64,000 nucleotides of DNA. Origin: Macrostomum lignano (taxonomy: Eukaryota). The DNA is taken from contig NIVC01001145.1 of assembly GCA_002269645.1 (NCBI GenBank), forward strand, positions 62,001 to 126,000, given 5' to 3'. Numbering within the stretch: the stretch's first letter is position 1; each line of letters opens with the position of its first letter. A model generated the notes under the pieces. The model searched no databases. It was not told the DNA's origin and saw only the letters and a program-made list of their open reading frames with translations. The position numbers and the translations under genes are program-made. Positions 16,301-62,981 of this stretch are shown here, one piece after another.

Positions 16301-17704
16301 GGAGGGGAAATCTCATGTAGGATAAAGCTGGGGAGGGGAAATCTCATGTAGGATAAAGCTGGGGAGGGGAAATCTCATGTAGGATAAAGCTGGGGAGGGG
16401 AAATCTCACCGAGCATAAAGCTATGATACGGAAATCCCACGGAAAAATCAGATTAGAATAAGCAGCAAATGTCCACACAAAAAACTCACTTTGCAATCGG
16501 CGATGGAGGGCCTAGAAAGATGGCCTGCTGCTGCTTACTAATCCGAATCAATACGAAATGACAAGCGTTCAATTCGTCAGTCCACGAGGCCAGCAGGTTT
16601 TGAATCTTCTCGCGCAGATGCGCCTCGCAACGGCGCCGAAGATTGGCGCCGGCAGATTTCGGTCCGCTAGCGCCGCCAGATTGAGAATCGCGCGCGCTCT
16701 GCAGTCCGCCCTGGCGTTTCCGTACGGCGTATTGGTGAAACGTTTTGTGAGCCACGGCTCGGCCAGATTCGTCAAATATTGCGCCGGCGAAATGACCGCC
16801 GGCTAGCATTAGAATTGCCCAGCGAAGCATTCTCGGCAGGGCGGCGGCTCGGCTCAGCAGAGACTCTTCGCTTGGGGCGGGCAGGTCGAATAGGCATCGG
16901 GCTATGCTCACGTACTCGCGGTCTTTGTTTAGGAAGAACAGACGGCCCGACTGGCTGAGCAGCTGGTGACGGGAGAGCGACGCAAAGCTGCCGTCTGACT
17001 GGCCACCGGCCTGCGGGGTCGGGGCGAGGATTCAGGGGCTAGGGGTTGAGGGGGATTCTTATCTGCAGGGGTTGAGGGGGATTCTTATCTGCAGGGGTTG
17101 AGGGGCGATTCTTATCTGTAGGGGTTGAGGGTCGATTCTTATCTGTAGGGGTTGAGGGGCGATTCTTATCTGTAAGGACGTTAGGGGCGATTTTTTTCGC
17201 AGCGATATTTTAAGCAGCTAATTTTCAGCTTACCTTGGCATCATTATTTTTAGCATAACTATTATTATCGTTCTCGGAGCTCGACGAATCCGAATCGTCT
17301 TCATCTTCATCGCCCGAGAGGCTGGACAGATCGGACGAAGCAAGCGAGCCGTCAGGTCCCGCTGCTCCACCGCCGTTGATCAGCTGATCGAATTCGGCTT
17401 CGCTAATACAAGCCTGTTGCTTAGCAACCCGATGCCGATTGTACAGATGCCAATCGGAGCGGAAATGCTCGCGCTGCTCGGCGCAACTGGAGAACTGCTC
17501 GCCGCATGTGGCGCATTGGAAAGAATCTAACTGCTGCTGCTGCTTTTGCTGCTCCTGGGGGAATAGGTTGAATTTACCTTTTAGCTTATCAAGCTGTCAA
17601 TCTGCTTTTCCATGTGTCTGTTTGTATGGCTGTCTTTCCGTCAGTCTGTCTGCCTGCCTGCCTGTGCCTGTCTGTCTATCTGTCTGTCTGTTTATCTGTC
17701 GTCC

Positions 17705-29300: not shown

Positions 29301-30083
29301 TAATGGACTCAGTGAGAATACTAATGGACTCAGTAAGAATACTAATAGACTCAGTAAAAATACTAATGGACTCAGTGAGAATACTAATGGACTCAGTTAG
29401 AATACTAATGGACTCAGTGAGAATACTAATGGACTCAGTGAGAATACTAATGGACTCAGTGAGAATACTAATGGACTCAGTGAGAATACTAATGGACTCA
29501 GTGAGAATACTAATGGACTCAGTGAGAATACAATTGGACTCAGTGAGAATACTAATGGACTCATTATTAGCAGACAGTACAAAATACTCTCCTCAGCAGC
29601 ATACCTGCGAGGGAGACGGCCTAGAAGGCGCGGATTCTTTAGTAAAAGCCAAATATTGCTGGCTAAGTATGTTCTTTACGTTTTGCTGCACAATAGCGTC
29701 TTTTTCTTCTTCGTTCAACGATTGCTCTTGATGATATTTATTGGTTTTTAATTTTTTCTGCTGTTGCTGCTGTTGCTGGGTCATAGTGAGAGCGGCGGTT
29801 GCAGCTGCAGATGCTGCAGCAATAGTTTGAGCAGCAGAAGAAGCAACAGTAGTAGCCAAGCTGCCACTTCCAGCCATAGACATTGTTGACACGGAGGCCG
29901 CTCCGGCGGAACTAGTTGGCGAAATCAATTGCTGCTGCTGCTGCTGCTGCTGAGAAGGCGGTGTTAATCCAATCACTGGCGGGTTGCCTAGCAACTGTTG
30001 CTGCTGCTGATGAGGCTTGGCTAAACTACCACCGCTGATAGCTATACCAGAAGCTACCGGAAGGCGTTGTTGAAATGCTTGCG

Positions 30084-30117
<34 letters not shown>

Positions 30118-33100
30118 TTGTTGTTGAGGCATTGGAGCAGCAATACGCATTTGAAACGGCTGCTGTTGCTGTTGCGAAGTATGAGGCTGCGATTGCTGCT
30201 GCTGGGCCGACGTGGCAAATCTAGGCTGGGCACTAATGTGCGATACAGGCACAGCGCCAGGCGCTACCGGCTGCTGAGACTGCTGCACGCGCATCATATT
30301 CGGATTGTGAGTTAATATAGTCACCTGTTGCTGTTGCTGCTGAGTAGGAGCCTGTTGCATCTGTAGTTAAAGTTAAACGAGTAACTTAGAGCATGAGAAG
30401 GTTTGAGGGGCTTGTTGTAAAGTTTAAGCCGGGGGTTGGCAAACCCTTTTTACCTCAAGGAAACTTGGCTCATGAGAGTCGAAAAGAGAGGCAATAGATT
30501 AGAGATGGGAGAATGTAGGAAAGGGATATAGAGAAGAGAAGACGATAGGGGGTGAGAAGAGCGGAAAGAGGAGAGGGAAGAGAAGAGGAAAGAGAGGAGA
30601 GAGGCAAGAGGGGAGATGGGAGAGAGGGAAGAGAGGGGAGAGGGGAGAGGAGGGAAGACAAGAGGAGAGAGGGGAGATGGAAGAGAGAGGAGAGAGGAGA
30701 GAGGGAAGGAGAGAGCTGAGAAGAGACACAAACCCTGATCGGGCCCGCATTGCTATTGTGAAATTTCAAAGGACCAGAGGGCAGGACAGAGCCGAAATGT
30801 GGCCCGCGAATCCGAGTTTGCCGACCCCTGCTTTAAGCCAACAAGGGCCAACCACTAGGACTAATCATTGAGCGTGACTCAATAGTCGCCTCTTAGTCGC
30901 ATTACAGTAGTTTGGAGTCGTTAAAAAGTCACAAGAGTCACCCTACAGGTCGGTGGAGTCACTAGTCAGTTGTTTGCAATGACCCTTTAGCGATTCTTAT
31001 CACCGTAACGTTTTTAACTGAGGTTGTACAGCGCCCCCCTCTGACTTTCTAATTGTCAAGCATGTGTACACTTTCTGTGCCTTGTGGTAAGCCAGAGTCA
31101 GGTGTTTTATCAGGATGAAAAGCATACATAGAAACAAATTTTATCGACAATTAACTACAACCGAAACATATAACTAACCTGCTGCTGCTGCTGTATGTTA
31201 ACGGACATAACTGGCACATTGTCAACGTGACTGCCAACGCGAACATCGACTGGCTGCGGCCCGCCAACCGCCGATGCGGCAGTGGGACCGAAGCTGAGCA
31301 TAGCCGGTCCAGAAGCCGCTGAGCCGGCACTGCTGCCAGTCAGAGCAAAATAGGCCGACACTCTGCTTAGCCTACTAGGATGATAGTCGCTCTCCCTTTG
31401 CATAGCATTATGCTGCACAGAATCTGTAACCCAATCCGGTAGTACAACGTGTACTCTAGCTTTTAATTGAGTCAATTGATCCATTAATCTGCCGCCGCCT
31501 TGAGTAGTGACAAAATGCGTCACAGTATTATCTAATCGACATTTCATTTCGGCGCCCCGGAAGCTCAACAAAGCGTACAGATTGAACCAGTCCTGTCGGC
31601 CAACTTTAGCTATGAAAGCTGTAACGCCGCGGAATAATTTCTTAATACTTGGATGAAACCAATCCATCTGTTGTTGATTCTGCAGCTTGCACGATAGCAG
31701 CACCCATTGCGGTGTAACGACTTTGACATTGTGCAAATCGGCCGCTTCGGCCACTTCGTCGGCGTCTGGATCGTCGCTAATTGCTACACTACAGCTAGAC
31801 GTCAATAGGCTGGTCTTACTGGCCCCATTGCGATCGAGGAGTTCCAGAGCCTGCGTGTTCACAGTGGAGAGCGGGGATTTGAGAATTGTAGAGATTTACG
31901 CACCCATTAAGTGCCACACAAAGCCAAGATTTAAGCACCTATTTAGTGCCACACAAACCCAAGATTTAAGCATTATTTAGTGCCACACAAAGCCAAGATT
32001 TAAGCACCCATTAAGTGCCACACAAAGCCAAGATTTAAGCATTATTTAGTGCCACACACAGCCCAGATTGCACAAATTTAATGCCATACATTAAAATGTA
32101 AAGAAAACAGCAAATATAGCACATTATAAATAAAAGAATTCTATTTTTTTGTACAAAAAAGAACTATAATTTTCTTGAAAACATTTTTTAACTCATTGCA
32201 TATAGTTAAACAATCTCAATAACTCAAGGAGATATTAATTATCCATGTTAATATAATATAGACAAGATAGTTTTGAAAATAGTAGGAAAATAAACGTCAA
32301 GAAAAAGATAAAAGATTTTCTTGGAGTTTACTCCACCAAGAGGTTTCTGCCCTGACTAAAATCTTCAGATCCAATGGTTACCCTCTCAGTTTTGCCAGCC
32401 GCATTATTAATGCATTTGTCACCAAGAAAGTTTCCAGCAATGTGAGCTCCAGACAAATGGAGATAGATTCTTGGGATACTCTATTGGTTCTCCCATCAAA
32501 GAGTTTTAGAGGTTGTAGGATTGTGGCTTATGAATGAGGAATGAAATTTAGGATGGGATAACACATGGCACATCTTTATGAAAGCTAGGAGTGCTTTAGT
32601 AATCATAAGTATATTGTGCTCAGATTGAGGCTTTAGGAAGCTTTGAGGCTTTATTGTAACCACTGCTTTCTATATTAGCAGACTGCAGCAATTTAACAGT
32701 GAATAGCAATTGGCAAATCAAGGCAATCCAACATAGTTTGTAAAAATGAAAGATTTATATAAAAAGCAATGCAATACAAGTGACACCATGGAAATTTCAA
32801 CATCAAGTTTTACCCAAAGATACTCTAAAATTTAAATGGCCTCTTAAGAAATGTGCATTGTCTTGGTTGTTAGACTGATGTAGACTACTACAATAGATCT
32901 GAAGATATGCAAGTTTTTCTCAGGGCTGCAAATTAGCTAGAAAGATTACATGATCAAAGCATAAGAACAATCATGAGAGTACTATGTTCTACACACTGGC
33001 TTTTGAAACAGTGATTGGCAGACTTTAACATCAAATGCCAGAAAAATCTTGCTTAGCTCTAGCTTCAGAGGAGAGGCGAGAGAAAGGATAAGAGAAAAGA

Positions 33101-36095: not shown

Positions 36096-43230
<7,135 letters not shown>

Positions 43231-47027: not shown

Positions 47028-48075
47028 AAATTCGATTGCTCCTGATTTCGAGGAGATTATATGATATAGTATCATAGTTTTTGTTAAAAATTACCACAGA
47101 CAACACATTCCCGGCTCAGAATAGTACAATTTTTTAACGATTAAATAAGCAATCGTATTTTATATGCACAGTCATAGATAAATAAAACGATTCATTTCTA
47201 TGTATATGATAGCCTCATTAGTGATACATCTATTCCAGGGGTCCGGCCGTCCCGCTGCTCAAGGTTTATGTCACTTCTCTCCTCTCTATAATCTTCTTTC
47301 AATTGACTCCTGTTCGACACTTCTTACCCCCTCATCTCTAGGACTCTAGGCTATGCTACGTACTAAAAGACAAACATCTGTCAACTTTATTTGTCAAACA
47401 CCATATTGTGTTTAAGCTCCTGGGTACAGGAGATTTAGCCCTTGAAACTAGGCAACAGATTAGGAAACAGATTAAGATTCTTGACAGCATCTTTCGCATT
47501 GGATTACTTTTAAATGTACATGTTGTTAAGTCGGTTGGGACCTCATTGGTTAATATTAGACTTGCATCTGTTTGGCTCATAGTTTTTAGAGATACAGAGG
47601 ATTGTGATGAGTTTCTCTTTAGTAGCTAATAGTGTCGGAGTTAGAAGGACTATACTTGACTGATCAAAACGACAGGAATGAGAGTAGGGCCAGGGAGGTC
47701 TCTGCGAAGGGAAGCGCGGTGCGGAGATGTGGTATATGGGGATAGAGCAGAAGGAACTGTATATCAGTTTCGCCATCCTCTCCTTCCTTGTTCCCCGTAC
47801 GAGTAGCTGTATGTGGAAAGAAAAACTACCCCTTCCTTGCTCCTTCCCGCTGTACGCCGGTGCGGTACGAGCTCAAGTCGCGGAAGTGGGACCTGGAATG
47901 AGGGGGGGGGGGGGGTTGGGCGTGAATGCTAGTGTGCGCGTGCGCATCTAACTCGACGTTATTAAATATCGACTCTGTCATTGGGAGAGCGCGTCCACTG
48001 CTGATAAATAATTCACAATTTCTATCATTAACTCCCGAGTCTAACAGTCTTGAAATCTGTTCATCAAAAAAACAC

Positions 48076-51000
48076 ATGGTAAGAATAATTTGAAAAATAT
48101 CTGGCCATGTCTCTGACCTTCTAAATGACTATAGAGAGTCTGGCTTTAAGAGTACTCCTGGCACTCCTCCAAGAGTATCCTCTGGCATCTGAAGAGTATA
48201 TTCTGGCAGCTGAAGAGTATCTTTATGGCATCTGAAGAGTATCTTTATGGCATCTGGCACTGGCACTGGCACTCACCCAAGAGTATCATCTGGCACTCAC
48301 CCAAGAGTATCATCTGGCACTCACCCAAGAGTATCATCTGGCACTCATCCAAGAGTATCATCTTGCACTCACCCAAGAGTATCATCTGGCACTCACCCAA
48401 GAGTATCATCTGGCACTCACCCAAGAGTATCATCTGGCACTCACCCAAGAGTATCATCTGGCAATCACCCTAGAGTATCATCTGGCACTCACCCAAGAGT
48501 ATCATCTTGCACTCACCCAAGAGTATCATCTGGCACTCACCCAAGAGTATCATCTGGCACTCACCCAAGAGTATCATCTGGCACTCACCCAAGAGTATCA
48601 TCTGGCACTCACCCAAGAGTATCATCTGGCACTCATCCAAGAGTATCATCTGGCACTCACCCAAGAGTATCATCTGGCACTCATCCAAGAGTATCATCTG
48701 GCACTCACCCAAGAGTATCATCTGGCACTCATCCAAGAGTATCATCTGGCACTCACCCAAGAGTATCATCTGGTACTCACCCAAGAGTATCATCTGGCAC
48801 TCATCCAAGAGTATCATCTGGCACTCACCCAAGAGTATCATCTGGCACTCATCCAAGAGTATCATCTGGCACTCACCCAAGAGTATCATCTGGCACTCAT
48901 CCAAGAGTATCATCTGGCACTCACCCAAGAGTATCGTCTGGCACTCACCCAAGAGTATCATCTGGCACTCACCCAAGAGTATCATCTGGCACTCACCCAA
49001 GAGTATCATCTTGCACTCACCCAAGAGTATCATCTTGCACTCACCCAAGATTATCATCTGGCACTCACCCAAGAGTATCATCTGGCACTCACCCAAGAGT
49101 ATCATCTGGCACTCACCCAAAGAGTATCATCTGGCACTCACCCAAGAGTATCATCTGGCACTCATCCAAGAGTATCATCTGGCACTCACCCAAGAGTATC
49201 ATCTTGCACTCACCCAAGATTATCATCTGGCACTCATCCAAGAGTATCATCTGGCACTCATCCAAGAGTATCATCTGGCACTCATCCAAGAGTATCATCT
49301 GGCACTCATCCAAGAGTATCATCTGGCACTCACCCAAGAGTATCATCTGGCACTCATCCAAGAGTATCATCTGGCACTCACCCAAGAGTATCATCTGGCA
49401 CTCATCCAAGAATATCATCTGGCACTCACCCAAGAGTACCATCTGGCACTCACCCAAGAGTATCATCTGGCACTCACCCAAAGAGTATCATCTGGCACTC
49501 ACCCAAGAGTATCATCTGGCACTCATCCAAGAGTATCATCTGGCACTCACCCAAGAATATCATCTGGCACTCACCCAAGAGTATCATCTGGCACTCACCC
49601 AAGAGTATCATCTGGCAATCACCCAAGAGTATCATCTGGCACTCACCCAAGAGTATCATCTGGCACTCACCCAAGAGTATCATCTGGCACTCATCCAAGA
49701 GTATCATCTGGCACTCATCCAAGAGTATCATCTGGCACTCACCCAAGAGTATCATCTGGCACTCATCCAAGAGTATCATCTGGCACTCACCCAAGAGTAC
49801 CATCTGGCACTCACCCAAGAGTATCATCTGGCACTCATCCAAGAGTACCATCTGGCACTCACCCAAGAGTATCATCTGGCACTCACCCAAGAGTATCATC
49901 TGGCACTCACCCAAGAGTATCATCTGGCACTCACCCAAGAGTATCATCTGGCACTCACCCAAGAGTATCATCTGGCACTCACCCAAGAGTACCATCTGGC
50001 ACTCACCCAAGAGTACCATCTGGCACTTACCCAAGAGTATCATCTGGCACTCATCCAAGAGTATCATCTGGCACTCACCCAAGAGTATCATCTGGCAATC
50101 ACCCAAGAGTATCATCTGGCACTCACCCAAGAGTATCATCTGGCAATCACCCAAGAGTACCATCTGGCACTCATCCTGTCTCAAGTGTATCTCTAACTCC
50201 TTTAAAGAGCACCCAAAACTAGCCTAGAGACAGCTTAGACACAGAATCAGTCCTGGAACTTTCAGACTCAAAATATTCAGCCATCTAGCAATGTTACTAA
50301 ACTTATATAAACCTGTCAATTACAGGGTGCCCAACAGAGCTACACTCTTGCCGACGTACGCCAGCGCGCCGAAGCTGGCGGAGCCGGCGACAACAACAAA
50401 TCGTCGAACGAAGCCGACGAAACACGCGACGCCGCTATTCAAGGCGTCCGGCTGGGCCTGCCGGCTGGCAACAGCAGCCGTCAAGTTGTTGAAGCCAACA
50501 TTGAGAGCATGTCCCGAGAGAAACTAATGGAACATCTCGCCCAGCTGGGTGTACCTCCGGCCGCTGAAGTGTCTGACGCTGATCTGGCCGCTATGCTGAA
50601 GTTGGCCGTTCGCAGCGACTTCTGGCGCGGTGTCTGGCAGCAGCATCCCAATAAGGGCCTGCTGCGCATGTGGATGTACTCTCACGATGGATTTAGAAAG
50701 CGGCTGACCGCCCTGCGCCAGACTGTGGCCGGCGATGGCGACTTGACTGCCGCTCAGGTGGGGCAAAGGCTCTTTCAATCTCTGCGTAGATTCATTAGAT
50801 TGCTTTGCCTTTTACAAGAGAGTCCTTATATCCCATTTGAGGATCGCCTCTAGTACCATTTTCAAGAACTCCCCCTGATACCATTTCCAAAAATCCCCTC
50901 TGATACCGTTTCTTCTAATAATTCCCTCTGATACCTTTTATAAGAATTCCCTCTGATACCGTTTCTTAGAATTCCCTCTGATACCGTTTCTAGGAATTCC

Positions 51001-52327
51001 CTCTGATGCCGTTTCTTAGAATTCCCTCTGATACCGTTTCTAGGAATTCCCTCTGATACCGTTTCTTCTAATAATTCCCTCTGATACCTTTTATAAGAAT
51101 TCCCTCTGATACCGTTTCTTAGAATTCCCTCTGATACCGTTTCTAGGAATTCCCTCTGATGCCGTTTCTTAGAATTCCCTCTGATACCGTTTCTAGGAAT
51201 TCCCTCTGATACCGTTTCTTTTAATAATTCCCTCTGATACCTTTTATAAGAATTCCCTCTGATACTGTTTCTAAGAATTCCCTCTGATGCCGTTTCTTAG
51301 AATTCCCTCTGATACCGTTTCTTAGAATTCCCTCTGATACCGTTTCTTAGAATTCCTTTGATACCGTTTCCAAGAATTTCCTCTGATGCCGTTTCCAAGA
51401 ATTCCCTCTGATACCGTTTCTAGGAATTCCCTCTGATACTGTTCCCAAGAATTCCCTCTGATACCGTTTCCAAGAATTCCCTCTGGCTCTGATACCGTTT
51501 CCAAGAATTCCCTCTGGCTCTGATACCGTTTCCAAGAATTCCCTCTGATACCGTTTCCAAGAATTCCCTCTGATGCTGTTTCCAAGAATTCCCTCTGATA
51601 CCGTTTCCAAGAATTCCCCCTGATGCCGTTTCCAAGAATTCCCCCTGATGCCGTTTCCAAGAATTCCCTCTGATACCGTTTCTTAGAATTCCCTCTGATA
51701 CCGTTTCTAGGAATTCCCTCTGATACCGTTTCTTAGAATTCTTTTGATACCGTTTCCAAGAATTCCCTCTGATGCTTTTTCCAATAGCCGCCCTAGTATC
51801 ATTTCTAAGATTCCTTCTCATTTTTATTACTCTTTTTGTTTAAAAAATCGCAAACTTATTGAAAAAAAAAAGTATTTTTGTCTACTAAAAGTAGGATTAT
51901 AAATTTTTTTCTCATTTAATTTCTTGTTCAACAGGTCGCCGACGTGGACAGTCATTTGCAGGGATTTCTAAAAAAGAACGCTCCCCATTCGGAGTTCGAA
52001 GACGCTCAACTGTTCCCCTACTTCAAAGAGGCCTATCCTCAGTTCGCTCAGTTCTGGCAAGAGATCGACAATCAGCATGGCAAGTTCAACGAAGTAGTGA
52101 AGAAAGCCACTGAGGCGATCGCTGCCGGCGCTTCCGGTGGCGCCAACGGCGACGCTAGAAAATCTCTGGCCGGCGCTGTTAACGGGCTGGCTGATTTCTA
52201 TGAAGATCACCTGCTGCTTGAGGAGCGACTCATGGTGCCGCTTTGGCTCAATGTCACGGATGCCCAGAAGGCCGAATTGCGTAGCCGTCTGCGCGGAATG
52301 TATTGGCTGTCGTCATATTCATTCTGA
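48076..52327 (+). CDS. Stand-alone hemerythrin-like (HHE cation-binding) protein with N-terminal myristoylation motif, 3 exons, about 275 aa
   Basis: Exons: 48076-48078 (ATG|gtaaga, inferred), 50326-50757, 51935-52327, all phase 0. Metal-ligand pattern H...HxxxE...H...HxxxE: MYSHDGFRKRL, PHSEFEDAQLFPYF, IDNQHGKF, FYEDHLLLEERLMVP. Spliced N-terminus is MGAQQS. AATAAA near 52396. Confidence 0.8.
48165..50175. repeat. 24-bp minisatellite (CTCACCCAAGAGTATCATCTGGCA), intron 1 of the hemerythrin-like gene
   Basis: About 83 units producing 8-aa-period spurious ORFs. Two +1 insertions at about 49121 and 49482. Confidence 0.97.
50865..51780. repeat. About 25-bp minisatellite (GAATTCCCTCTGATACCGTTTCTTA), intron 2 of the hemerythrin-like gene
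   Basis: Tandem units, each with an EcoRI site. Confidence 0.96.
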
Positions 52328-52439
52328 TTTCTTGGGGTAGAGCGATGAGATTAGTTTTATCGTTAGAAGTTTTAGCAGTTTTATTACACTTTTCATTTAG
52401 CTACTTGAAGTAGTCAATAAAGAAACGTTTGAATTTTAA

Positions 52440-55075
52440 TCCGATTGATTCTTCAACTTTTGATCGATTCTTAAACTTTGATCTGATCGATTTCTTAAAC
52501 TTTGATCTGATCGATTTCCTCAACTTTGATCTGATCGATTTCTTAAACTTTGATCTGATCGATTTCCTCAACTTTGATCTGATCGATTTCTTAACTTTGA
52601 TCTGATCGATTTCTTAAACTTTGATCTGATCGATTTCTTAAACTTTGATCTGATCGATTTCCTCAACTTTGATCTGATCGATTTTAAAACTTTGATCAGA
52701 TCGATTTTAAAACTTTGATCTGATCGATTTCCTCAACTTTGATCTGATCGATTTCTTAAACTTTGATCTGATCGATTTCTTAAACTTTGATCTGATCGAT
52801 TTCCTCAACTTTGATCTGATCGATTTCCTCAACTTTGATCTGATCGATTTCCTCAACTTTGATCTGATCGATTTCCTCAACTTCGATCTGATCGATTTCT
52901 TAAACTTTGATCTGATCGATTTTCTCAACTTTGATCTGATCGATTTCTTAAACTTTGATCTGATCGATTTCCTCAACTTTGATCTGATCGATTTCTTAAA
53001 CTTTGATCTGATCGATTTCCTCAACTTTGATCTGATCGATTTCTTAAACTTTGATCTGATCGATTTCCTCAACTTTGATCTGATCGATTTCTTAACTTTG
53101 ATCTGATCGATTTCTTAAACTTTGATCTGATCGATTTCTTAAACTTTGATCTGATCGATTTCTTAAACTTTGATCTGATCGATTTCCTCAACTTTGATCT
53201 GATCGATTCTTAAACTTTGATCTGATCAATTCTTAAACTTTGATCTGATCGATTTCTTAAACTTTGATCTGATCGATTTCTTAAACTTTGATCTGATCGA
53301 TTTCTTAAACTTTGATCTGATCGATTTTAAAACTTTGATCTGATCGATTTTAAAACTTTGATCTGATCGATTTTAAAACTTTGATCTGATCGATTTCTTA
53401 AACTTTGATCTGATCGATTTCTTAAACTTTGATCTGATCGATTTCCTCAACTTTGATCCGATCGATTCTTAAACTTTGATCTGATCGATTCTTAAACTTT
53501 GATCTGATCGATTTCTTAAACTTTGATCTGATCGATTTCCTAAACTTTGATCTGATCGATTCCTAAACTTTGATCTGATCGATTCTTAAACTTTGATCTG
53601 ATCGATTTTAAAACTTTGATCTGATCGATATTTAAACTTTGATCTGATCGATTCCTAAACTTTGATCTGATCGATTCTTAAACTTTGATCTGATCGATTT
53701 TAAAACTTTGATCTGATCGATTCTTACACTTTGATCTGGTCGATTTTTAACTTTGATCTGATCGATTCCTAAACTTTGATCTGATCGATTCCTAAACTTT
53801 GATCTGATCGATTCTTACACTTTGATCTGATCGATATTTAAACTTTGATCTGATCGATTCCTAAACTTTGATCTGATCGATTCCTAAACTTTGATCTGAT
53901 CGATTCCTAAACTTTGATCTGATCGATTCCTAAACTTTGATCTGATCGATTCCTAAACTTTGATCTGATCGATTCCTAAACTTTGATCTGATCGATTCTT
54001 AAACTTTGATCTGATCGATTTTAAAACTTTGATCTGATCGATATTTAAACTTTGATCTGATCGATTCCTAAACTTTGATCTGATCGATTCTTAAACTTTG
54101 ATCTGATCGATTTTAAAACTTTGATCTGATCGATTCTTACACTTTGATCTGATCGATTTTTAACTTTGATCTGATCGATTCCTAAACTTTGATCTGATCG
54201 ATTCCTAAACTTTGATCTGATCGATTCCTAAACTTTGATCTGATCGATTCTTAAACTTTGATCTGATCGATTTTAAAACTTTGATCTGATCGATATTTAA
54301 ACTTTGATCTGATCGATATTTAAACTTTGATCTGATCGATTCTTAAACTTTGATCTGATCGATTTTAAAACTTTGATCTGATCGATTCTTAAACTTTGAT
54401 CTGATCGATTTTAAAACTTTGATCTGATCGATTCTTAAACTTTGATCTGATCGATTCTTAAACTTTGATCTGATCGATTTTAAAACTTTGATCTGATCGA
54501 TATTTAAACTTTGATCTGATCGATTCCTAAACTTTGATCTGATCGATTCTTGCACTTTGATCTGATCGATTTTAAAACTTTGATCTGATCGATTCCTAAA
54601 CTTTGATCTGATCGATTCTTAAACTTGGATCTGATCGATTCTTAAACTTTGATCTGATCGATTTTAAAACTTTGATCTGATCGATATTTAAACTTTGATC
54701 TGATCGATTCCTAAACTTTGATCTGATCGATTCTTAAACTTTGATCTGATCGATTTTAAAACTTTAATCTGATCGATTCTTACACTTTGATCTGATCGAT
54801 TTTTAAACTTTGATCTGATCGATTCTTAAACTTTGATCTGATCGATATTTAAACTTTGATCTGATCGATTCCTAAACTTTGATCTGATCGATTTTAAAAC
54901 TTTGATCTGATCGATTTTAAAACTTTGATCTGATCGATTTTAAAACTTTGATCTGATCGATTCTCCAACTTTGATCTGATCGATTCCTAAACTTTGATCT
55001 GATCGATATTTAAACTTTGATCTGATCGATTCCTAAACTTTGATCTGATCGATTCTTGCACTTTGATCTGATCGA
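52440..55075. repeat. 24/23-bp GATC-rich minisatellite (AAACTTTGATCTGATCGATTTCTT)
   Basis: About 110 units; 24-bp units dominate the left part and 23-bp units the right. Confidence 0.97.
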
Positions 55076-55845: not shown

Positions 55846-56341
55846 GTCACGATATTAGCAAACATTTCATCGACTATCTATTATGCTTATGTAAGTGTTT
55901 AAGTCAATTTGCATCATACCAATCATTCTGCCATTGCAATAAGATTTTTCCAGATTTTACTAATTTCGTAATGTTTCTATTATACTACTATAATTTTCGC
56001 TACTGTTATAATTGTTCTACTATAATTACAATTGCATTATATTTTTGTTTTTTTGTTCGGTGTCTTTAGATAGTAGCTAAAAAATCTAAAACTTTGAATT
56101 ATGCGCAACAAAATAAAAAGCGCAATTTAATTTTTTGCTTGTTTGTTTGTTTGTGTGTGTGTGCGTTTGTGTACGTTTGTTTGTGTTTGTTTGTGTTTGT
56201 TGTTCGTTGCATTATTTAAATACAAAATCTTACTGGCGTTTTATTTTTTTCTCGAGCTATACTTTTGTAGCAGGTTTTCTGTTGCTTTCAGGGAGAGAAA
56301 GAGAGTTGGCTGCAGCAGGCGCCTTTTGGGCAGTAGGTAGG

Positions 56342-59300
56342 GATGCAGGTCAGTAGAGATAGAGATGCAGGTCAGTAGAGAGAGAGATGCAGATCAGAAG
56401 AGACAGAGATGCAGGTCAGTAGAGATAGAAATGCAGGTCAGAAGAGACAGAGATGCAGGTCAGTAGAGATAGAAATGCAGGTCAGAAGAGACAGAGATGC
56501 AGGTCAGTAGAGATAGAAATGCAGGTCAGAAGAGACAGAGATGCAGGTCAGTAGAGATAGAAATGCAGGTCAGAAGAGACAGAGATGCAGGTCAGTAGAG
56601 ATAGAAATGCAGGTCAGAAGAGACAGAGATGCAGGTCAGTAGAGATAGAAATGCAGGTCAGAAGAGACAGAGATGCAGGTCAGTAGAGATAGAAATGCAG
56701 GTCAGAAGAGACAGAGATGCAGGTCAGTAGAGATAGAAATGCAGGTCAGAAGAGACAGAGATGCAGGTCAGTAGAGATAGAAATACAGGTTTTAAGAGAC
56801 AGAGATGCAGGTCAGTAGAGATAGAGATGCAGGTCAGTAGAGACAGAGATTCAGGTCATTAGAGATAGAGATGCAGGTCAGTAGAGATAGAGATGCAGGT
56901 CAGTAGAGATAGAGATGCAGGTCAGTAGAGATAGAGATGCAGGTCAGTAGAGATAGAGATGCAGGTCAGTAGAGATAGAGGCGCAGGTCAGTAGAGATAG
57001 AGATGCAGGTCATTAGAGATAGAGATGCAGGTCAGTAGAGATAGAGATGCAGGTCAGTAGAGATAGAGATGCAGGTCAGTAGAGAGAGAGGCGCAGGTCA
57101 GTAGAGATAGAGATGCAGGTCAGTAGAGATAGAGATGCAGGTCAGTAGAGATAGAGATGCAGGTCAGTAGAGATAGAGGCGCAGGTCAGTAGAGATAGAG
57201 ATGCAGGTCAGTAGAGATAGAGATGCAGGTCAGTAGAGACAGAGATTCAGGTCATTAGAGATAGAGATGCAGGTCAGTAGAGATAGAGATGCAGGTCAGT
57301 AGAGATAGAGATGCAGGTCAGTAGAGATAGAGATGCAGGTCAGTAGAGATAGAGGCGCAGGTCAGTAGAGATAGAGATGCAGGTCAGTAGAGATAGAGAT
57401 TCAGGTCATTAGAGATAGAGATGCAGGTCAGTAGAGATAGAGATGCAGGTCAGTAGAGATAGAGATGCAGGTCAGTAGAGATAGAGGCGCAGGTCAGTAG
57501 AGATAGAGATGCAGGTCAGTAGAGACAGAGATTCAGGTCATTAGAGATAGAGATGCAGGTCAGTAGAGATAGAGGCGCAGGTCAGTAGAGACAGAGATGC
57601 AGGTCAGTAGAGATAGAGATGCAGGTCAGTAGAGATAGAGATGCAGGTCAGTAGAGATAGAGATGCAGGTCAGTAGAGATAGAGATGCAGGTCAGTAGAG
57701 ATAGAGGCGCAGGTAAGTAGAGATAGAGATGCAGGTCAGTAGAGATAGAGATTCAGGTCATTAGAGATAGAGATGCAGGTCAGTAGAGATAGAGATGCAG
57801 GTCAGTAGAGATAGAGATGCAGGTCAGTAGAGATAGAGGCGCAGGTCAGTAGAGATAGAGATGCAGGTCAGTAGAGAGAGAGATGCAGATCAGAAGAGAC
57901 AGAGATGCAGGTCAGTAGAGATAGAAATGCAGGTCAGAAGAGACAGAGATGCAGGTCAGTAGAGATAGAAATGCAGGTCAGAAGAGACAGAGATGCAGGT
58001 CAGTAGAGATAGAGATGCAGGTCAGTAGAGATAGAGGCGCAGGTCAGTAGAGATAGAGATGCAGGTCAGTAGAGAGAGAGATGCAGATCAGAAGAGACAG
58101 AGATGCAGGTCAGTAGAGATAGAAATGCAGGTCAGAAGAGACAGATGCAGGTCAGTAGAGATAGAAATGCAGGTCAGAAGAGACAGAGATGCAGGTCAGT
58201 AGAGATAGAAATGCAGGTCAGAAGAGACAGAGATGCAGGTCAGTAGAGATAGAAATGCAGGTCAGAAGAGACAGAGATGCAGGTCAGTAGAGATAGAAAT
58301 GCAGGTCAGAAGAGACAGAGATGCAGGTCAGTAGAGATAGAAATGCAGGTCAGAAGAGACAGAGATGCAGGTCAGTAGAGATAGAAATGCAGGTCAGAAG
58401 AGACAGAGATGCAGGTCAGTAGAGATAGAAATGCAGGTCAGAAGAGACAGAGATGCAGGTCAGTAGAGATAGAAATGCAGGTCAGAAGAGACAGAGATGC
58501 AGGTCAGTAGAGATAGAAATGCAGGTCAGAAGAGACAGAGATGCAGGTCAGTAGAGATAGAAATGCAGGTCAGAAGAGACAGAGATGCAGGTCAGTAGAG
58601 ATAGAAATGCAGGTCAGAAGAGACAGAGATGCAGGTCAGTAGAGATAGAAATGCAGGTCAGAAGAGACAGAGATGCAGGTCAGTAGAGATAGAAATACAG
58701 GTTTTAAGAGACAGAGATGCAGGTCAGTAGAGATAGAAATACAGGTTTTAAGAGACAGAGATGCAGGTCAGTAGAGATAGAAATGCAGGTCAGAAGAGAC
58801 AGAGATGCAGGTCAGTAGAGATAGAAATGCAGGTCAGAAGAGACAGAGATGCAGGTCAGTAGAGACAGAGATGCAGGTCAGTAGAGATAGAAATGCAGGT
58901 CAGAAGAGACAGACATGCAGGTCAGTAGAGATAGAAATGCAGGTCAGAATAGATAAAGATGCAGGTCAGTAGAGATAGAAATGCAGGTCAGTAGAGATAG
59001 AGATGCAGGTCAGAAGAGACAGAGGCGCAGGTCAGAAGAGACAGAGGCGCAGGTCAGTAGAGACAGAGATGCAGGTCAGTAGAGATAGAGATGCAGGTCA
59101 GAAGAGACAGAGATGCAGGTCAGTAGAGAGAGGCGCAGGTCAGTAGAGATAGAGATGCAGGTCAGTAGAGACATAGATTCAGGTCATTAGAGATAGAGAT
59201 GCAGGTCAGTAGAGATAGAGATGCAGGTCAGTAGAGACAGAGATTCAGGTCATTAGAGATAGAGATGCAGGTCAGTAGAGATAGAGATGCAGGTCAGTAG

Positions 59301-60378
59301 AGATAGAGATGCAGGTCAGTAGAGATAGAGATGCAGGTCAGTAGAGATAGAGGCGCAGGTCAGTAGAGATAGAGATGCAGGTCAGTAGAGATAGAGATTC
59401 AGGTCATTAGAGATAGAGATGCAGGTCAGTAGAGATAGAGATGCAGGTCAGTAGAGATAGAGATGCAGGTCAGTAGAGATAGAGGCGCAGGTCATTAGAG
59501 ATAGAGATGCAGGTCAGTAGAGATAGAGATGCAGGTCAGTAGAGATAGAGATGCAGGTCAGTAGAGATAGAGGCGCAGGTCAGTAGAGATAGAGATGCAG
59601 GTCAGTAGAGATAGAGATGCAGGTCAGTAGAGACAGAGATTCAGGTCATTAGAGATAGAGATGCAGGTCAGTAGAGATAGAGATGCAGGTCAGTAGAGAT
59701 AGAGATGCAGGTCAGTAGAGATAGAGATGCAGGTCAGTAGAGATAGAGGCGCAGGTCAGTAGAGATAGAGATGCAGGTCAGTAGAGATAGAGATTCAGGT
59801 CATTAGAGATAGAGATGCAGGTCAGTAGAGATAGAGATGCAGGTCAGTAGAGATAGAGATGCAGGTCAGTAGAGATAGAGGCGCAGGTCAGTAGAGATAG
59901 AGATGCAGGTCAGTAGAGACAGAGATTCAGGTCATTAGAGATAGAGATGCAGGTCAGTAGAGATAGAGGCGCAGGTCAGTAGAGACAGAGATGCAGGTCA
60001 GTAGAGATAGAGATGCAGGTCAGTAGAGATAGAGGCGCAGGTCAGTAGAGATAGAGATGCAGGTCAGTAGAGATAGAGATTCAGGTCATTAGAGATAGAG
60101 ATGCAGGTCAGAAGAGATAGAGATTCAGGTCATTAGAGATAGAGATGCAGGTCAGTAGAGACAGAGGCGCAGGTCAGTAGAGATAGAAATGCAGGTCAGA
60201 AGAGACAGAGATGCAGGTCAGTAGAGATAGAGATGCAGGTCAGTAGAGACAGAGGCGCAGGTCAGTAGAGAGAGAGGCGCAGGTCAGTAGAGAGAGAGAA
60301 CCGCAGGTCAGTAGAGACAGAGATGCAGGTCAGTAGAGATAGAGATGCAGGTCAGAAGAGATAGAGATTCAGGTCGGT
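56342..60378. repeat. 22-bp minisatellite (GAGATGCAGGTCAGTAGAGATA), about 183 units
   Basis: Monomer domains alternate with 44-bp dimer domains (...GATAGAAATGCAGGTCAGAAGAGACA). Confidence 0.98.
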
Positions 60379-60813
60379 AGATATGGACTTAGAAGTAAGA
60401 AGTCTGGCAAAAAGATTAGCACGAACTATAGCTAGGTGCTGCGAGCTGCCTATGCTATCGTATGCAAAGGTCTCGATGCAGTCTGCATACGTTGTCTATA
60501 CGTTTTCTCTATGGCGCAGGGTAGATTGTGCTCGGTCCGATATATGCTGTATACACAATAGTTTTGTTTTTACAAGGTTTACGAGAGCACACAAAGCAGC
60601 TATCTCTGTCTTATTTAACTACTTGGCCTCATACTATATATGCTTCGTTTTTACATAGTAAAAGCACCTGAATATCTGTATCTAGTTACTATGTCAGATA
60701 GTAAAAAGGCATACGTTAATATGAATCACCTTTTGTTGATCAGTCTTGACAGTGCATTTTCGATCGGTCGTTTCATTTCAGCTACAATACGAAGCAAAAA
60801 AAAGCAGGCAACA

Positions 60814-62981
60814 ATGGCATCATCTGTGGTGCATTCCCGAGCTTACCTGCTCATTGAACAGGAATTGCTAAAATTTGAACGTAATCCTGTTAAGGTAAGT
60901 CTATTGAATCAGTACTTTGGAAATCTACCGGGAATCGCCATCTAACTTCATTAGGAATCGCCCTCTAACCTCATTAGGAATCGCCCTCTAACCTCATTAG
61001 GAATCGCCCTCTAACCTCATTAGGAATCGCCCTCTAACCTCATTAGGAATCGCCCTCGAACCTCATTAGGAATCGCCCTCTAACCTCATTAGGAATCGCC
61101 CTCTAACCTCATTAGGAATCGCCCTCTAACCTCATTAGGAATCGCCCTCGAACCTCATTAGGAATCGCCCTCTAACCTCATTAAGAATCGCCCTCTAACC
61201 TCATTAGGAATCGCCCTCGAACCTCATTAGGAATCGCCCTCTAACCTCATTAGGAATCGCCCTCTAACCTCATTCGGAATCGCCCTCTAACCTCATTAGT
61301 AATTGCCCTCTAACCTTATTAGGAATTGCCCTCTAACCTCATTGGTAATTGTAATTACCCTTTAACCGCATTAGGAATCGCCCTCTAACCTCATTAGGAA
61401 TCGCCCTCGAACCTCATTAGTAATTGCCCTCTAACCTCATTAGGAATCGCCCTCTAACCTCATTAGTAATTGCCCTCTAACCTTATTAGGAATTGCCCTC
61501 TAACCTCATTGGTAATTGTAATTACCCTTTAACCGCATTAGTAATTGCCCTCTAACCTCATTAGGAATCGCCCTCTAACCTCTTTAGTAATTGCCCTCTA
61601 ACCTTATTAGGAATTGCCCTCTAACCTCATTGGTAATTGTAATTACCCTTTAACCGCATTAGGAATCGCCCTCTAACCTCATTAGGAATCGCCCTCGAAC
61701 CTCATTAGTAATTGCCCTCTAACCTCATTAGGAATCGCCCTCTAACCTCATTAGTAATTGCCCTCTAACCTTATTAGGAATTGCCCTCTAACCTCATTGG
61801 TAATTGTAATTACCCTTTAACCGCATTAGTAATTGCCCTCTAACCTCATTAGGAATCGCCCTCTAACCTCATTAGTAATTGCCCTCTAACCTTATTAGGA
61901 ATTGCCCTCTAACCTCATTGGTAATTGTAATTACCCTTTAACCGCATTAGGAATCGCCCTCTAACCTCATTAGGAATCGCCCTCTAACCTCATTAGGAAT
62001 CGCCCCAATCCTTTAAAATTCAGGGCATCCGAGTCTATCCAACCAGGGCCGGCAATCTATTTTCACTGTCGGCAAAGATCAAAGGCCTACCAGACACTCT
62101 GTGGGACGGTGGCGTATTGAAGCTCAGACTAAGATTCTCCGAGAGCTACAATTATGTGCCACCTGAGGCTAATTTTGTGACTGTGCCATTTCATCCTAAT
62201 GGTAAGATATGTTTTTATTATTTATTACTATAGTGCTAAGACTACAAAGATTATTTTTAAACTTACTTAGTGATTAGGGTGTATTAGGGTAATGTCCCGA
62301 AGTTAGTTCAGTCAAAAATGTATTTTATTCCCAAAACAATACTCGTTTAGTTTGATTGCGAGCTATTATTGATCTTTGTGTAGTTTTTCAAGAGCTCTGT
62401 TAAAAAATACCCGCAACATGAATTTTATAGTACTAACAGTGGTCCTACGACTTGTGCGTTGATTATAAAAGTAATTTGTTTAAAAAGGATTCGGGACCCC
62501 AAATCCCGGGATTTCGGGATCCCGGGATCCCGGGATTGCAATCCCCAGTACCAATCTATATTTTCGCTTTGCCATTCGCAGTTGAACCGGACACTGGTCG
62601 TGTTGCATGTCCTTATCTGGACGATCCGCAGAAATGGAACGCGTCAGTTTCTTTAGCCGATTTATTGAGCAGCATTCAACAGCAGCTAACTGAGCCAAAT
62701 GCTCAGCTAATATTGAATCCCGAGGCTGCCGAAATGATGAGCACTGATTATGAGCAATATAAAAGCGTAGTTGCTCAGTGCGTACAAATGAGCCAAATTG
62801 TTGAAAGTGAGTTTGCGTCTTGTATTTTGCTTTTTTAGGTTAGTGTTAGTTAATTATTGTCATTTTTAACTACATTATCATGTTTTAATTTTAATAAATA
62901 ATAACATTTATTGTCTTTTTAGCTACAGAAGTCGCCATTTCTCCACCAAATCCGCCCGCAAAGCCTTTGCGAGCTGGCATC
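60814..62981 (+). CDS. UBE2U: Ubiquitin-conjugating enzyme E2, UBE2U-like (3' end incomplete; probably continues beyond the window)
   Basis: Exons 60814-60894, 62024-62201, 62582-62806 and 62923-about 62981 (last donor uncertain); phases consistent. UBC fold: HSRAYLLIEQEL...WDGGVLKLRLRFSESYNYVPPEANFVTVPFHPNVEPDTGRVACPYLDDPQKW...LNPEAA. RAYLL, YNYxPP and LDxPxKWN resemble human UBE2U as recalled. The window ends in an acceptor-like pyrimidine tract. Confidence 0.8.
60945..62005. repeat. 23-bp minisatellite (GAATCGCCCTCTAACCTCATTAG), UBE2U-like intron 1
   Basis: About 45 units, with a recurring composite variant (TGGTAATTGTAATTACCCTTTAACCGC). Confidence 0.96.

What the first reader, a model, noticed from the sequence alone, without database searches (positions are those of the whole stretch)
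48076..52327. Spliced, N-myristoylation-ready, stand-alone hemerythrin-like di-iron protein in an animal genome
Seen: a three-exon gene whose first coding exon appears to be just ATG|gtaaga, giving MGAQQS (Gly2/Ser6 myristoylation consensus). This is followed by a short helix-loop-helix segment reminiscent of SAP/LEM/HeH motifs (MSREKLMEHLAQLGV...SDADLAAML) and a complete H/HxxxE/H/HxxxE ligand set. Established: this HHE-type fold is common in bacteria, fungi, protists and plants; the familiar animal examples are FBXL5 and the distinct respiratory hemerythrins. Inference: a membrane-anchored iron, O2 or NO sensor or detoxifier, possibly horizontally acquired and domesticated. The two satellite-filled introns argue against contamination.
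Basis: partly seen in the sequence, partly recalled or inferred. Interest (0 to 1): 0.7.

Follow-up and report, generated by a model that had tools for sequence, protein, structure and literature searches.

The report
Flatworm lipid-anchored di-iron hemerythrin-like gene
The window holds a real, intact gene of the flatworm Macrostomum lignano for a hemerythrin-like di-iron protein with a probable fatty-acid anchor; its only named relatives are in algae and water moulds, and its start codon probably comes from the trans-spliced leader RNA, not from a one-codon exon.

Summary
The window is M. lignano contig NIVC01001145.1. Exons 50326-50757 and 51935-52327, both with canonical splice sites, encode a 275-aa protein once an ATG is placed in front. 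It matches Pfam Hemerythrin HHE (E=4e-13). Ligands H121, H163xxxE167, H193 and H237xxxE241 align one-to-one with those of E. coli YtfE. The AlphaFold model is confident (pLDDT 87).

Gly2 is probably real. The protein belongs to an uncharacterised eukaryotic family found in green algae, brown algae, diatoms and an oomycete. Of 33 members that start with Met, 18 start with MG. The "HeH-like" segment is a conserved cap of this family, with no SAP match.

The ATG|gtaaga micro-exon is doubtful. The homeologous locus, whose protein is 98% identical, reads ATA there. The M. lignano spliced leader ends in ATG, and the acceptor TTACAG fits the published trans-splice motif. The neighbouring RuvBL2 gene in this window also starts its reading frame at an acceptor with no ATG. 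Both routes give MGAQQS.

No other animal homologue was found, but the protein branches outside all sampled algal clades. Horizontal transfer is therefore plausible, not shown. UniProt already calls the protein a hemerythrin-domain protein. Function is inferred only.

The parts
48076..48078 (+). Candidate one-codon first exon (ATG followed by gtaaga). Probably not the main source of Met1.
   Evidence: Sequence. The homeolog L002 reads ATA at this site. It is the only ATGGT with a good donor upstream of the acceptor.
48079..50325 (+). Outron if the gene is trans-spliced, or intron 1 if cis-spliced. Mostly a 24-bp minisatellite (48266-50173, 79 copies).
   Evidence: TRF. It is 2247 nt here and 844 nt in L002.
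50320..50325 (+). 3' splice acceptor TTACAG.
   Evidence: It fits the motif [T/C]TNCAG, the one most enriched at M. lignano SL trans-splice sites (PMC8629364). An in-frame stop at 50308-50310 closes the frame upstream.
50326..50757 (+). Coding exon for residues 2-145. It holds Gly2...Ser6, the N-terminal helices, the conserved helix-loop-helix cap (R65-A95 = 50515-50607), FW100-101, H108 (HPN) and H121.
   Evidence: Translation. 98.4% identical to L002. Family alignment.
50758..51934 (+). Phase-0 intron (GT...AG) between Q145 and V146. It contains a 25-bp minisatellite (50860-51773).
   Evidence: It is 527 nt in L002. The position is not shared with introns of the Choristocarpus or Seminavis homologues, and the Bryopsis gene is intronless.
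51935..52327 (+). Coding exon for residues 146-275 plus the TGA stop. It holds H163xxxE167, H193 and H237xxxE241-E242.
   Evidence: Alignment to YtfE ligands.
52416..52421 (+). AATAAA polyadenylation signal, 89 nt after the stop codon.
38638..38787 (+). Start of the reading frame of the neighbouring RuvBL2 (TIP49) gene, directly after the acceptor cattag|. There is no ATG. This is an in-window precedent for a start codon given by the spliced leader.
   Evidence: ORF residue 9 aligns with human RUVBL2 residue 5, and the first in-frame Met (residue 50) aligns with human M46.

Best explanation
This is a functional nuclear gene of Macrostomum lignano (GenBank PAA71700.1, annotated as a 5'-partial hypothetical protein).

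Transcript (inferred): the pre-mRNA is most likely trans-spliced at the acceptor at 50325/50326 to the 35-nt spliced leader, which ends ...TTGCATG. The leader then gives the initiator AUG in frame and in a good Kozak context (G at -3, G at +4). One cis intron (50758-51934) is also removed.

Protein: 275 aa, starting MGAQQSY.
- After removal of Met1, Gly2 is a substrate for N-myristoyltransferase. This would tether the protein, probably reversibly, to a membrane (inferred).
- Residues 65-107 form a three-helix cap specific to the family.
- Residues 115-250 form a hemerythrin-like four-helix bundle. H121, H163, E167, H193, H237 and E241 are placed to bind a di-iron centre as in YtfE/RIC.

Function (inferred): a membrane-associated di-iron protein that reacts with O2, NO or peroxide, or that hands over iron. 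That would be a sensing or iron-centre-repair role like that of the RIC/YtfE group.

Shown here: gene structure, conservation of both homeologous copies, family membership, ligand set and predicted fold.
Inferred only: trans-splicing at this site, myristoylation, iron binding and the biological role.
For: Gene and locus:
- The window is identical to NIVC01001145.1.
- The homeolog L002 keeps the order RuvBL2, hemerythrin gene, UQ_con.
- The coding sequences differ at 11 of 825 nt with no frame disruption. Upstream DNA is 91% identical.

Spliced-leader AUG:
- The SL sequence CGGTCTCTTACTGCGAAGACTCAATTTATTGCATG is attached to 30-39% of M. lignano genes (PMC8629364; PMC5730564).
- The flatworm SL AUG is a known initiator (PMC9851317, citing Cheng 2006).
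- L002 has ATA in place of the cis ATG.
- The acceptor TTACAG fits the trans-splice motif.
- The frame is closed by a stop just upstream of the acceptor, and the first ATG in the exon is M63.
- RuvBL2 next door also needs an added AUG at its acceptor.

Gly2 and myristoylation:
- MGAQQSY fits the PROSITE myristoylation pattern.
- 18 of 33 Met-starting homologues begin MG, and 16 fit the pattern.
- Further MG members are P0113-P0116.

Di-iron fold:
- Pfam PF01814, E=4e-13.
- The family profile hits YtfE at E=1e-6 with all six ligands aligned.
- AlphaFold pLDDT 87.4, pTM 0.85, with four long helices carrying the ligands.
- Foldseek finds the hemerythrin-like NMB1532 (2p0n: probability 1.0, target TM-score 0.70).
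Against: - No RNA evidence was reachable. SL use at this acceptor is therefore inferred, not seen.
- The window copy does carry a strong ATG|GTAAGA, about 70 nt after a TATA-like ATAAATA (48004). A chance site there has only about 2-7% probability. A usable donor in the outron would favour cis-splicing.
- The ATG to ATA change in L002 is a single substitution in a recent duplicate (synonymous divergence about 2%). It could be a fresh loss.
- The 5'-partial label is common in this annotation and weighs little.
- Myristoylation motifs give false positives, and there is no second membrane signal (no nearby Cys, no polybasic patch).
- The flatworm protein departs from family consensus at well-conserved positions: RVKNWLW is LLRMWMY, and the C-terminal YLSWKY..MY is changed.
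- The nearest characterised relatives are only distantly similar, so the function could differ.
Confidence: 0.6

Rival explanations
1. Transcription starts near 48040, the first coding exon is the ATG at 48076-48078 alone, and a 2247-nt cis intron joins it to 50326. The protein is the same (MGAQQS...). This route could also run alongside trans-splicing for this copy only.
For: ATG|GTAAGA is a strong donor matching the M. lignano consensus GT[G/A]AG. It is the only such site upstream. A TATA-like ATAAATA lies at 48004. Chance expectation is low.
Against: The homeolog reads ATA at this site while its ORF stays intact. The site lies in DNA that diverges at the neutral-looking rate of the flank, 91% identity. 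GenBank models of both copies lack this exon. A leader that ends in ATG is available, and the neighbouring gene needs it.
Confidence: 0.27
2. Translation starts at M63 (50509). The first 183 nt of the exon are then 5' UTR, and the protein is a soluble 213-aa hemerythrin-like protein with no lipid anchor.
For: M63 is the first ATG in the exon in any frame. The L002 copy has no cis ATG.
Against: Residues 2-62 stay open in frame in both copies, with only one amino-acid change. Gly2...Ser6 and the following T-L-x-D-V stretch align with the conserved MGxxxS...[ST][VL]xx[VL][LI] N-termini of homologues. AlphaFold places helices at 9-20, 30-43 and 53-61 with pLDDT about 70-90.
Confidence: 0.08
3. Origin, reading A: the gene entered the Macrostomum lineage by horizontal transfer from an alga or another protist. 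It then gained an intron, host minisatellites and the SL-given start codon.
For: All named homologues are from Tetraselmis, Bryopsis, Nemacystus, Choristocarpus, Ditylum, Seminavis and Saprolegnia. No other animal appears among 77 hits in 1.84 billion representative proteins. GC3 is 0.62-0.66, against 0.38-0.52 in neighbouring exons. The intron position is not shared with algal homologues.
Against: The flatworm protein is sister to all 51 core family members in 72 of 100 bootstrap trees and is nested in only 2, so no donor can be named. Identity is only 22-33%. The tree is neighbour-joining with a long branch. Genomes of other Macrostomum species and most flatworm transcriptomes were not searchable here.
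Confidence: 0.4
4. Origin, reading B: an old eukaryotic gene inherited vertically and lost in nearly all other sampled animals.
For: It sits outside the algal and oomycete clade. The family spans distant eukaryotic groups, Chlorophyta and stramenopiles.
Against: It needs very many independent losses across animals, and no fungal, choanoflagellate or other animal member was seen among the named hits.
Confidence: 0.35
5. Contaminating algal DNA, for example from the diatom food, or an assembly artefact.
For: The family is otherwise algal. From my own knowledge, M. lignano cultures are fed diatoms.
Against: The gene sits inside contigs of 325 kb and 877 kb, between RuvBL2 and a UQ_con gene, in both homeologs. 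Its intron and flanks carry the same kind of minisatellites that make up 43% of the window. Identity to diatom members is only about 24-28%.
Confidence: 0.01

Closest known systems
Uncharacterised eukaryotic family of MG-start hemerythrin-like proteins (e.g. Tetraselmis striata TSEL_006336, Bryopsis GMH45172.1, Choristocarpus CAM9322900.1, Nemacystus g10254, Ditylum A0A6S8Y349, Seminavis, Saprolegnia XP_012202972.1)
   Same: Same length class (about 230-280 aa) and the same order of parts: MGxxxS/T start, helix-loop-helix cap with L72/G76, the FW..HPN..W..H..R motif, K..HSxFEDxxLF, QH, HLxxEE and WL. Invariant residues W117, H121, K159, H163, E167, L171, F172 and E242 are all present.
   Different: Only 22-33% identity. 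RVKNWLW is replaced by LLRMWMY, and the C-terminal YLSWKY..MY is altered. It branches outside all sampled members. It is the only animal member, and its start codon is not encoded next to Gly2 in the genome.
E. coli YtfE / RIC (repair of iron centres) di-iron proteins, PDB 5fnn and 7bha
   Same: Best solved relative by profile (E=1e-6). All six metal ligands align: H84/H129/E133/H160/H204/E208 with H121/H163/E167/H193/H237/E241.
   Different: No ScdA_N N-terminal domain. NCBIfam RIC/YtfE models score far below their cut-offs or not at all. This protein has an N-terminal lipidation motif and a different cap.
FBXL5 hemerythrin-like domain (the animal iron/oxygen sensor), PDB 3u9j and 3v5x
   Same: Hemerythrin-like four-helix bundle in an animal protein.
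   Different: Profile match is only E about 0.8. There is no F-box and no leucine-rich repeats, and this protein stands alone.
Flatworm mRNAs that take their initiator AUG from the spliced leader (Schistosoma mansoni; Cheng et al. 2006, as cited in PMC9851317)
   Same: The leader ends in AUG. The reading frame starts at the trans-splice acceptor with no genomic ATG. The adjacent RuvBL2 gene shows the same layout.
   Different: Here the given Met would sit directly before a Gly and so create a myristoylation site. SL use at this site has not been observed directly.

Membership tests
Hemerythrin HHE cation-binding domain superfamily (Pfam PF01814) | Profile match above the curated cut-off | tested here: met
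   50.4 bits against a cut-off of 25.3, E=4e-13, residues 114-248. All 38 aligned family members match.
Hemerythrin HHE cation-binding domain superfamily (Pfam PF01814) | Four-helix bundle carrying the ligands H / HxxxE / H / HxxxE | tested here: met
   AlphaFold helices 115-134, 143-178, 180-211 and 217-250 carry H121, H163/E167, H193 and H237/E241. Foldseek hit 2p0n has a target TM-score of 0.70.
Hemerythrin HHE cation-binding domain superfamily (Pfam PF01814) | Binds two iron atoms | not testable with these tools
   Needs purified protein.
RIC / YtfE iron-sulfur cluster repair di-iron proteins | Match to the equivalog models TIGR03652 / NF008221 above cut-off | tested here: not met
   No hit for the flatworm protein. 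Family member P0006 scores 18.9 bits against a cut-off of 254.
RIC / YtfE iron-sulfur cluster repair di-iron proteins | N-terminal ScdA_N domain | tested here: not met
   Pfam finds only PF01814.
RIC / YtfE iron-sulfur cluster repair di-iron proteins | Six conserved di-iron ligands | tested here: met
   All six align in the profile-to-YtfE alignment.
FBXL5-type iron sensor | Hemerythrin-like domain fused to an F-box and leucine-rich repeats | tested here: not met
   No F-box or LRR hit. The PDB profile match to FBXL5 is E about 0.8.
Respiratory hemerythrin / bacteriohemerythrin (TIGR02481, NF033749) | Match above the curated cut-off | tested here: not met
   20.9 bits against 51.75, and 17.7 bits against 84.
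SAP / LEM / HeH helix-extension-helix DNA-binding motifs | Profile match to SAP or a related Pfam model | tested here: not met
   No such hit in any of 38 family members at E<=0.01. The segment is helix 65-74, loop, helix 85-95 with pLDDT above 90, continuous with the bundle.
N-myristoylated proteins | Gly at position 2 and the pattern G-{EDRKHPFYW}-x(2)-[STAGCN]-{P} | tested here: met
   GAQQSY fits. 16 of 33 Met-starting homologues also fit. This depends on an ATG being joined directly before GGT.
N-myristoylated proteins | Covalent myristate on Gly2 | not testable with these tools
   Needs labelling or mass spectrometry.
SL trans-spliced mRNAs with a leader-given AUG (flatworms) | The organism's leader ends in AUG | tested here: met
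   The M. lignano SL ends ...TTGCATG (PMC8629364).
SL trans-spliced mRNAs with a leader-given AUG (flatworms) | The frame opens at an acceptor of trans-splice type, with no genomic ATG available | tested here: met
   TTACAG|GGT, with a stop at 50308-50310 in frame upstream. The first exon ATG is codon 63. The homeolog lacks the cis ATG.
SL trans-spliced mRNAs with a leader-given AUG (flatworms) | Reads carrying the leader joined at this acceptor | not testable with these tools
   No transcript data were reachable.

The most novel reading that the evidence does not exclude
An alga- or protist-derived gene for a myristoylated di-iron protein was taken up by the Macrostomum lineage. It works there because the flatworm's spliced leader supplies the AUG directly in front of Gly2. 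Trans-splicing would then serve as the adaptor that restores both translation and the lipid anchor of a foreign gene. This would be the only animal member of a so far undescribed eukaryotic family of membrane-tethered hemerythrin-like proteins.
Probability: 0.3. Interest if true: 0.65.

Novelty: new variant of a known kind. Interest (0 to 1): 0.5.

Why it matters
Apart from FBXL5 and the respiratory hemerythrins, animals are not known to carry stand-alone hemerythrin-like di-iron proteins. This one ties a flatworm gene to an unstudied family of algal and oomycete proteins that share a lipid-anchor motif, a cap domain and a YtfE-like iron site.

M. lignano can be made transgenic and treated by RNAi. 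It could therefore be a convenient animal in which to find out what the whole family does, whether oxygen, nitric oxide or iron handling at a membrane.

The locus is also a clean test case for two wider questions. One is how often the flatworm spliced leader supplies the start codon, here creating a myristoylation site. The other is whether such trans-splicing eases the domestication of foreign genes. It also shows that 5'-partial gene models in this genome can hide complete proteins.

Tried and rejected
I did not try it by another route.
- The leader sequence itself is not in the window, and no Rfam family matches the window.
- Searching papers and the supplements of three M. lignano papers for the gene ids Mlig032384 and Mlig016643 gave nothing.
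- The word-indexed search with the family alignment returned only two proteins, probably because low-complexity words swamped it. A consensus-sequence query worked better.
- I first took the 5'-partial GenBank label as evidence for trimming of the leader. Neighbouring genes show that annotated starts jitter by 0-9 nt around acceptors and that partial ORFs are routine, so I gave this little weight.
- Foldseek E-values are all above 0.1, as is usual for helical bundles. Only the hemerythrin-like hits 2p0n and 6q09 are meaningful. Talin, the FAK FAT domain and pore-forming toxin hits were dismissed as generic bundles.
- An operon with RuvBL2 was considered. The gap is about 7 kb, or about 4 kb after removing repeats, above the 1-kb threshold used in PMC8629364, so it is unlikely.
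- The long ORFs listed inside the 24-bp minisatellite (up to 649 aa) are repeat artefacts.
- The literature search for hemerythrin together with myristoylation found no description of this family.
Full report
**What is in the sequence**

- An ATG at 48076-48078 is followed by gtaaga.
- An acceptor ttacag|GGT lies at 50325/50326.
- One exon runs 50326-50757 and ends CAG|gtgggg. A second runs 51935-52327 after caacag| and ends in TGA.
- AATAAA lies at 52416.
- Joined, the pieces give a 275-aa protein, MGAQQSYTLADV...SSYSF.
- The frame of the first large exon is closed by a stop at 50308-50310, just upstream of the acceptor. The first ATG inside that exon, in any frame, is codon 63.

The two intervening stretches are mostly minisatellite: a 24-bp unit in 79 copies and a 25-bp unit in 36 copies.

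**Where the window comes from**

The protein is 98% identical to UniProt A0A1I8HXK9, "Hemerythrin domain-containing protein" of the flatworm Macrostomum lignano. The window is identical to GenBank contig NIVC01001145.1 of assembly Mlig_3_7.

The GenBank proteins PAA71700.1 and PAA92452.1 are 5'-partial. They start at QQS and AQQS. The UniProt models start LQGAQQS, reading through the intron end. The gene is therefore already catalogued, but its N-terminus is unresolved.

Minisatellites with 17-36-bp units cover about 43% of the window. The neighbours are ordinary animal genes: a multi-BRCT gene, RuvBL2 (TIP49) and a ubiquitin-conjugating-enzyme gene.

A second contig (L002, NIVC01000051.1) carries a homeologous copy with the same gene order. 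This rules out contamination.

**Is the ATG micro-exon real?**

The two copies compare as follows.
- Their coding sequences differ at 11 of 825 nt: 4 synonymous and 6 non-synonymous codons, with no frame disruption.
- Both keep the splice sites.
- The upstream DNA is 91% identical.
- At the proposed micro-exon, the homeolog reads AAACACATAgtaaga. The ATG is ATA there, and no other ATG|GT with a usable donor lies upstream in that copy.

The M. lignano spliced leader offers another source for the start codon.
- Its sequence is CGGTCTCTTACTGCGAAGACTCAATTTATTGCATG. It ends in ATG and is added to 30-39% of genes (PMC8629364; PMC5730564).
- The motif most enriched at its acceptors is [T/C]TNCAG. The acceptor here is TTACAG.
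- The 3'-terminal AUG of flatworm leaders is a known initiator (PMC9851317, citing Cheng et al. 2006).
- Joining the leader to 50326 gives AUG-GGU-GCC, the same protein, with G at -3 and G at +4.

The window holds an independent precedent.
- The reading frame of the adjacent RuvBL2 gene begins exactly after the acceptor cattag| at 38638.
- The codon before it is the TAG of the acceptor.
- ORF residue 9 aligns with residue 5 of human RUVBL2.
- The first in-frame Met is residue 50, equal to human M46, deep in the conserved domain.
- No good ATG|GT donor lies within 3 kb upstream.
That gene also needs an added AUG at its acceptor.

Against this reading:
- ATG|GTAAGA is a strong site, and I estimate only a 2-7% chance of one arising by accident in that stretch.
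- It lies about 70 nt after a TATA-like element.
- One substitution in a young duplicate is thin evidence.

I put the leader-given AUG at roughly 70% and the cis micro-exon at roughly 27%. The two are not exclusive for this copy, and both give MGAQQS. I could reach no transcript data.

**Is Gly2 real?**

An exhaustive HMMER search of 1.84 billion representative proteins found 77 hits. About 35 of them form a distinct family of 230-280-aa proteins. They cover the query from about residue 46 to the end at 22-34% identity.
- Of 33 members that begin with Met, 18 begin MG and 16 fit the PROSITE myristoylation pattern, for example MGNSESQ, MGSGQST, MGNSSSS and MGNGASL. More appeared in a further search.
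- The stretch after the motif also aligns (T-L-A-D-V against S-V-A-D-V-L and similar).

The lipidation-ready N-terminus is therefore a family trait. This argues that translation starts directly before Gly2 and not at M63.

**The fold and the metal site**

- Pfam gives Hemerythrin HHE at E=4e-13.
- A profile of the family hits E. coli YtfE (RIC) at E=1e-6. H121, H163, E167, H193, H237 and E241 align with the YtfE ligands H84, H129, E133, H160, H204 and E208. FBXL5 is only a marginal hit.
- AlphaFold2 with the family alignment gives pLDDT 87.4 and pTM 0.85. Four long helices (115-134, 143-178, 180-211, 217-250) carry those residues.
- Foldseek's only meaningful matches are hemerythrin-like proteins: 2p0n with a target TM-score of 0.70, and 6q09.
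- The curated RIC/YtfE, hemerythrin-domain and bacteriohemerythrin models of NCBIfam are not met.

The "HeH-like" segment forms helices 65-74 and 85-95, followed by 98-107. It has pLDDT above 90 and L72 and G76 are nearly invariant. No SAP-type profile matches any of the 38 members. I read it as a family-specific cap on the bundle, not a DNA-binding module.

**Who else has it, and where did it come from?**

Every homologue that carries a name is from an alga or an oomycete: Tetraselmis, Bryopsis, Nemacystus, Choristocarpus, Ditylum, Seminavis and Saprolegnia. The rest are unnamed metagenome or read-archive contigs. No other animal was seen.

In neighbour-joining trees rooted on the nearest bacterial hemerythrin-like proteins, the flatworm protein is sister to all 51 core family members in 72 of 100 bootstraps. 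It is nested among them in only 2. No donor lineage can be named, and a long-branch artefact is possible.

Two weak hints fit a foreign origin:
- GC3 is 0.62-0.66, against 0.38-0.52 for neighbouring exons.
- The intron position (Q145|V146) is not shared with the Choristocarpus or Seminavis genes, and the Bryopsis gene has no intron.

I rate horizontal transfer and vertical descent with massive loss as about equally likely. Recent transfer from the diatom food, or contamination, is excluded.

**How it most likely works**

Shown: an intact, duplicated gene kept in both copies, encoding a protein with a complete YtfE-like ligand set in a confidently predicted four-helix bundle, and a member of a conserved eukaryotic family.

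Inferred:
- The leader gives Met1.
- Met1 is removed and Gly2 is myristoylated. This gives weak, probably switchable, membrane binding, because there is no nearby Cys or basic patch.
- The bundle binds two irons.
- The protein reacts with O2, NO or peroxide, or donates iron, as RIC proteins are thought to do.

The specific role is unknown, and I hold it with low confidence.

**Verdict**

- The gene is real, animal-resident and of unusual ancestry.
- The myristoylation motif is well supported by comparison with homologues.
- The one-codon exon is probably a coincidence that stands in for the spliced leader.
- The SAP/HeH idea is not supported.
- Horizontal transfer is open.

The protein is already in the databases as an unnamed hemerythrin-domain protein. 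What is new is the completed N-terminus, the family it belongs to and its isolation among animals. Interest is moderate (0.5).

Noticed in passing
window 38638-42078 (+): The RuvBL2 (TIP49) gene starts its reading frame directly at an acceptor (cattag|GCAGCC) with no genomic ATG. The first in-frame Met equals human M46. It appears to rely on the AUG of the spliced leader, and its GenBank model is 5'-incomplete for that reason.
   Followed up: yes
window 60811-62838 (+); L002 14154-14171: The annotated start of the ubiquitin-conjugating-enzyme gene lies 3-9 nt after an acceptor (gcag|GCAACAATGGCA). Its own ATG is 6 nt downstream and in frame with a leader AUG, so two initiation sites are possible. 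Annotated 5' ends in this assembly jitter by 0-9 nt around acceptors.
   Followed up: partly
whole window, e.g. 5958-7458, 10613-12269, 14518-16423, 52461-55075, 56331-60381: About 43% of the 64 kb is tandem minisatellite with 17-36-bp units of many unrelated sequences. The arrays differ greatly in length between homeologs: 2247 against 844 nt upstream of the acceptor, and 1177 against 527 nt in the intron. They also produce long spurious ORFs.
   Followed up: partly
window 20348-31862 (-): Several exons on the minus strand encode BRCT domains, pointing to a multi-BRCT gene of the TopBP1 type.
   Followed up: no
window 47903-47916: A G14 run lies in the conserved GC-rich stretch upstream of the gene. 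Its length differs between the homeologs (14 against 11 G).
   Followed up: no
UniProt A0A1I8F7Y1 (P0005), corresponding to window 50320-50470: One older gene model reads the first 47 residues of the exon in the wrong frame (YRVPNRATLL...). This is most likely an indel error in the earlier assembly.
   Followed up: no
proteins P0028, P0034, P0045, P0047, P0055 and others: The nearest bacterial-looking relatives are about 190 aa. They share a W..HPN...FWL.RH..FR motif ahead of the first ligand His with the eukaryotic family, which hints at the bacterial subgroup from which the family arose.
   Followed up: no
L003-L005 and family proteins P0016, P0019, P0098-P0108, P0111: A diatom-type subfamily ends in YLSWKYCFMY. 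It lacks the MG start and begins with ...LP.SLTVPYL... instead. The lipid anchor is therefore not universal in the family.
   Followed up: partly
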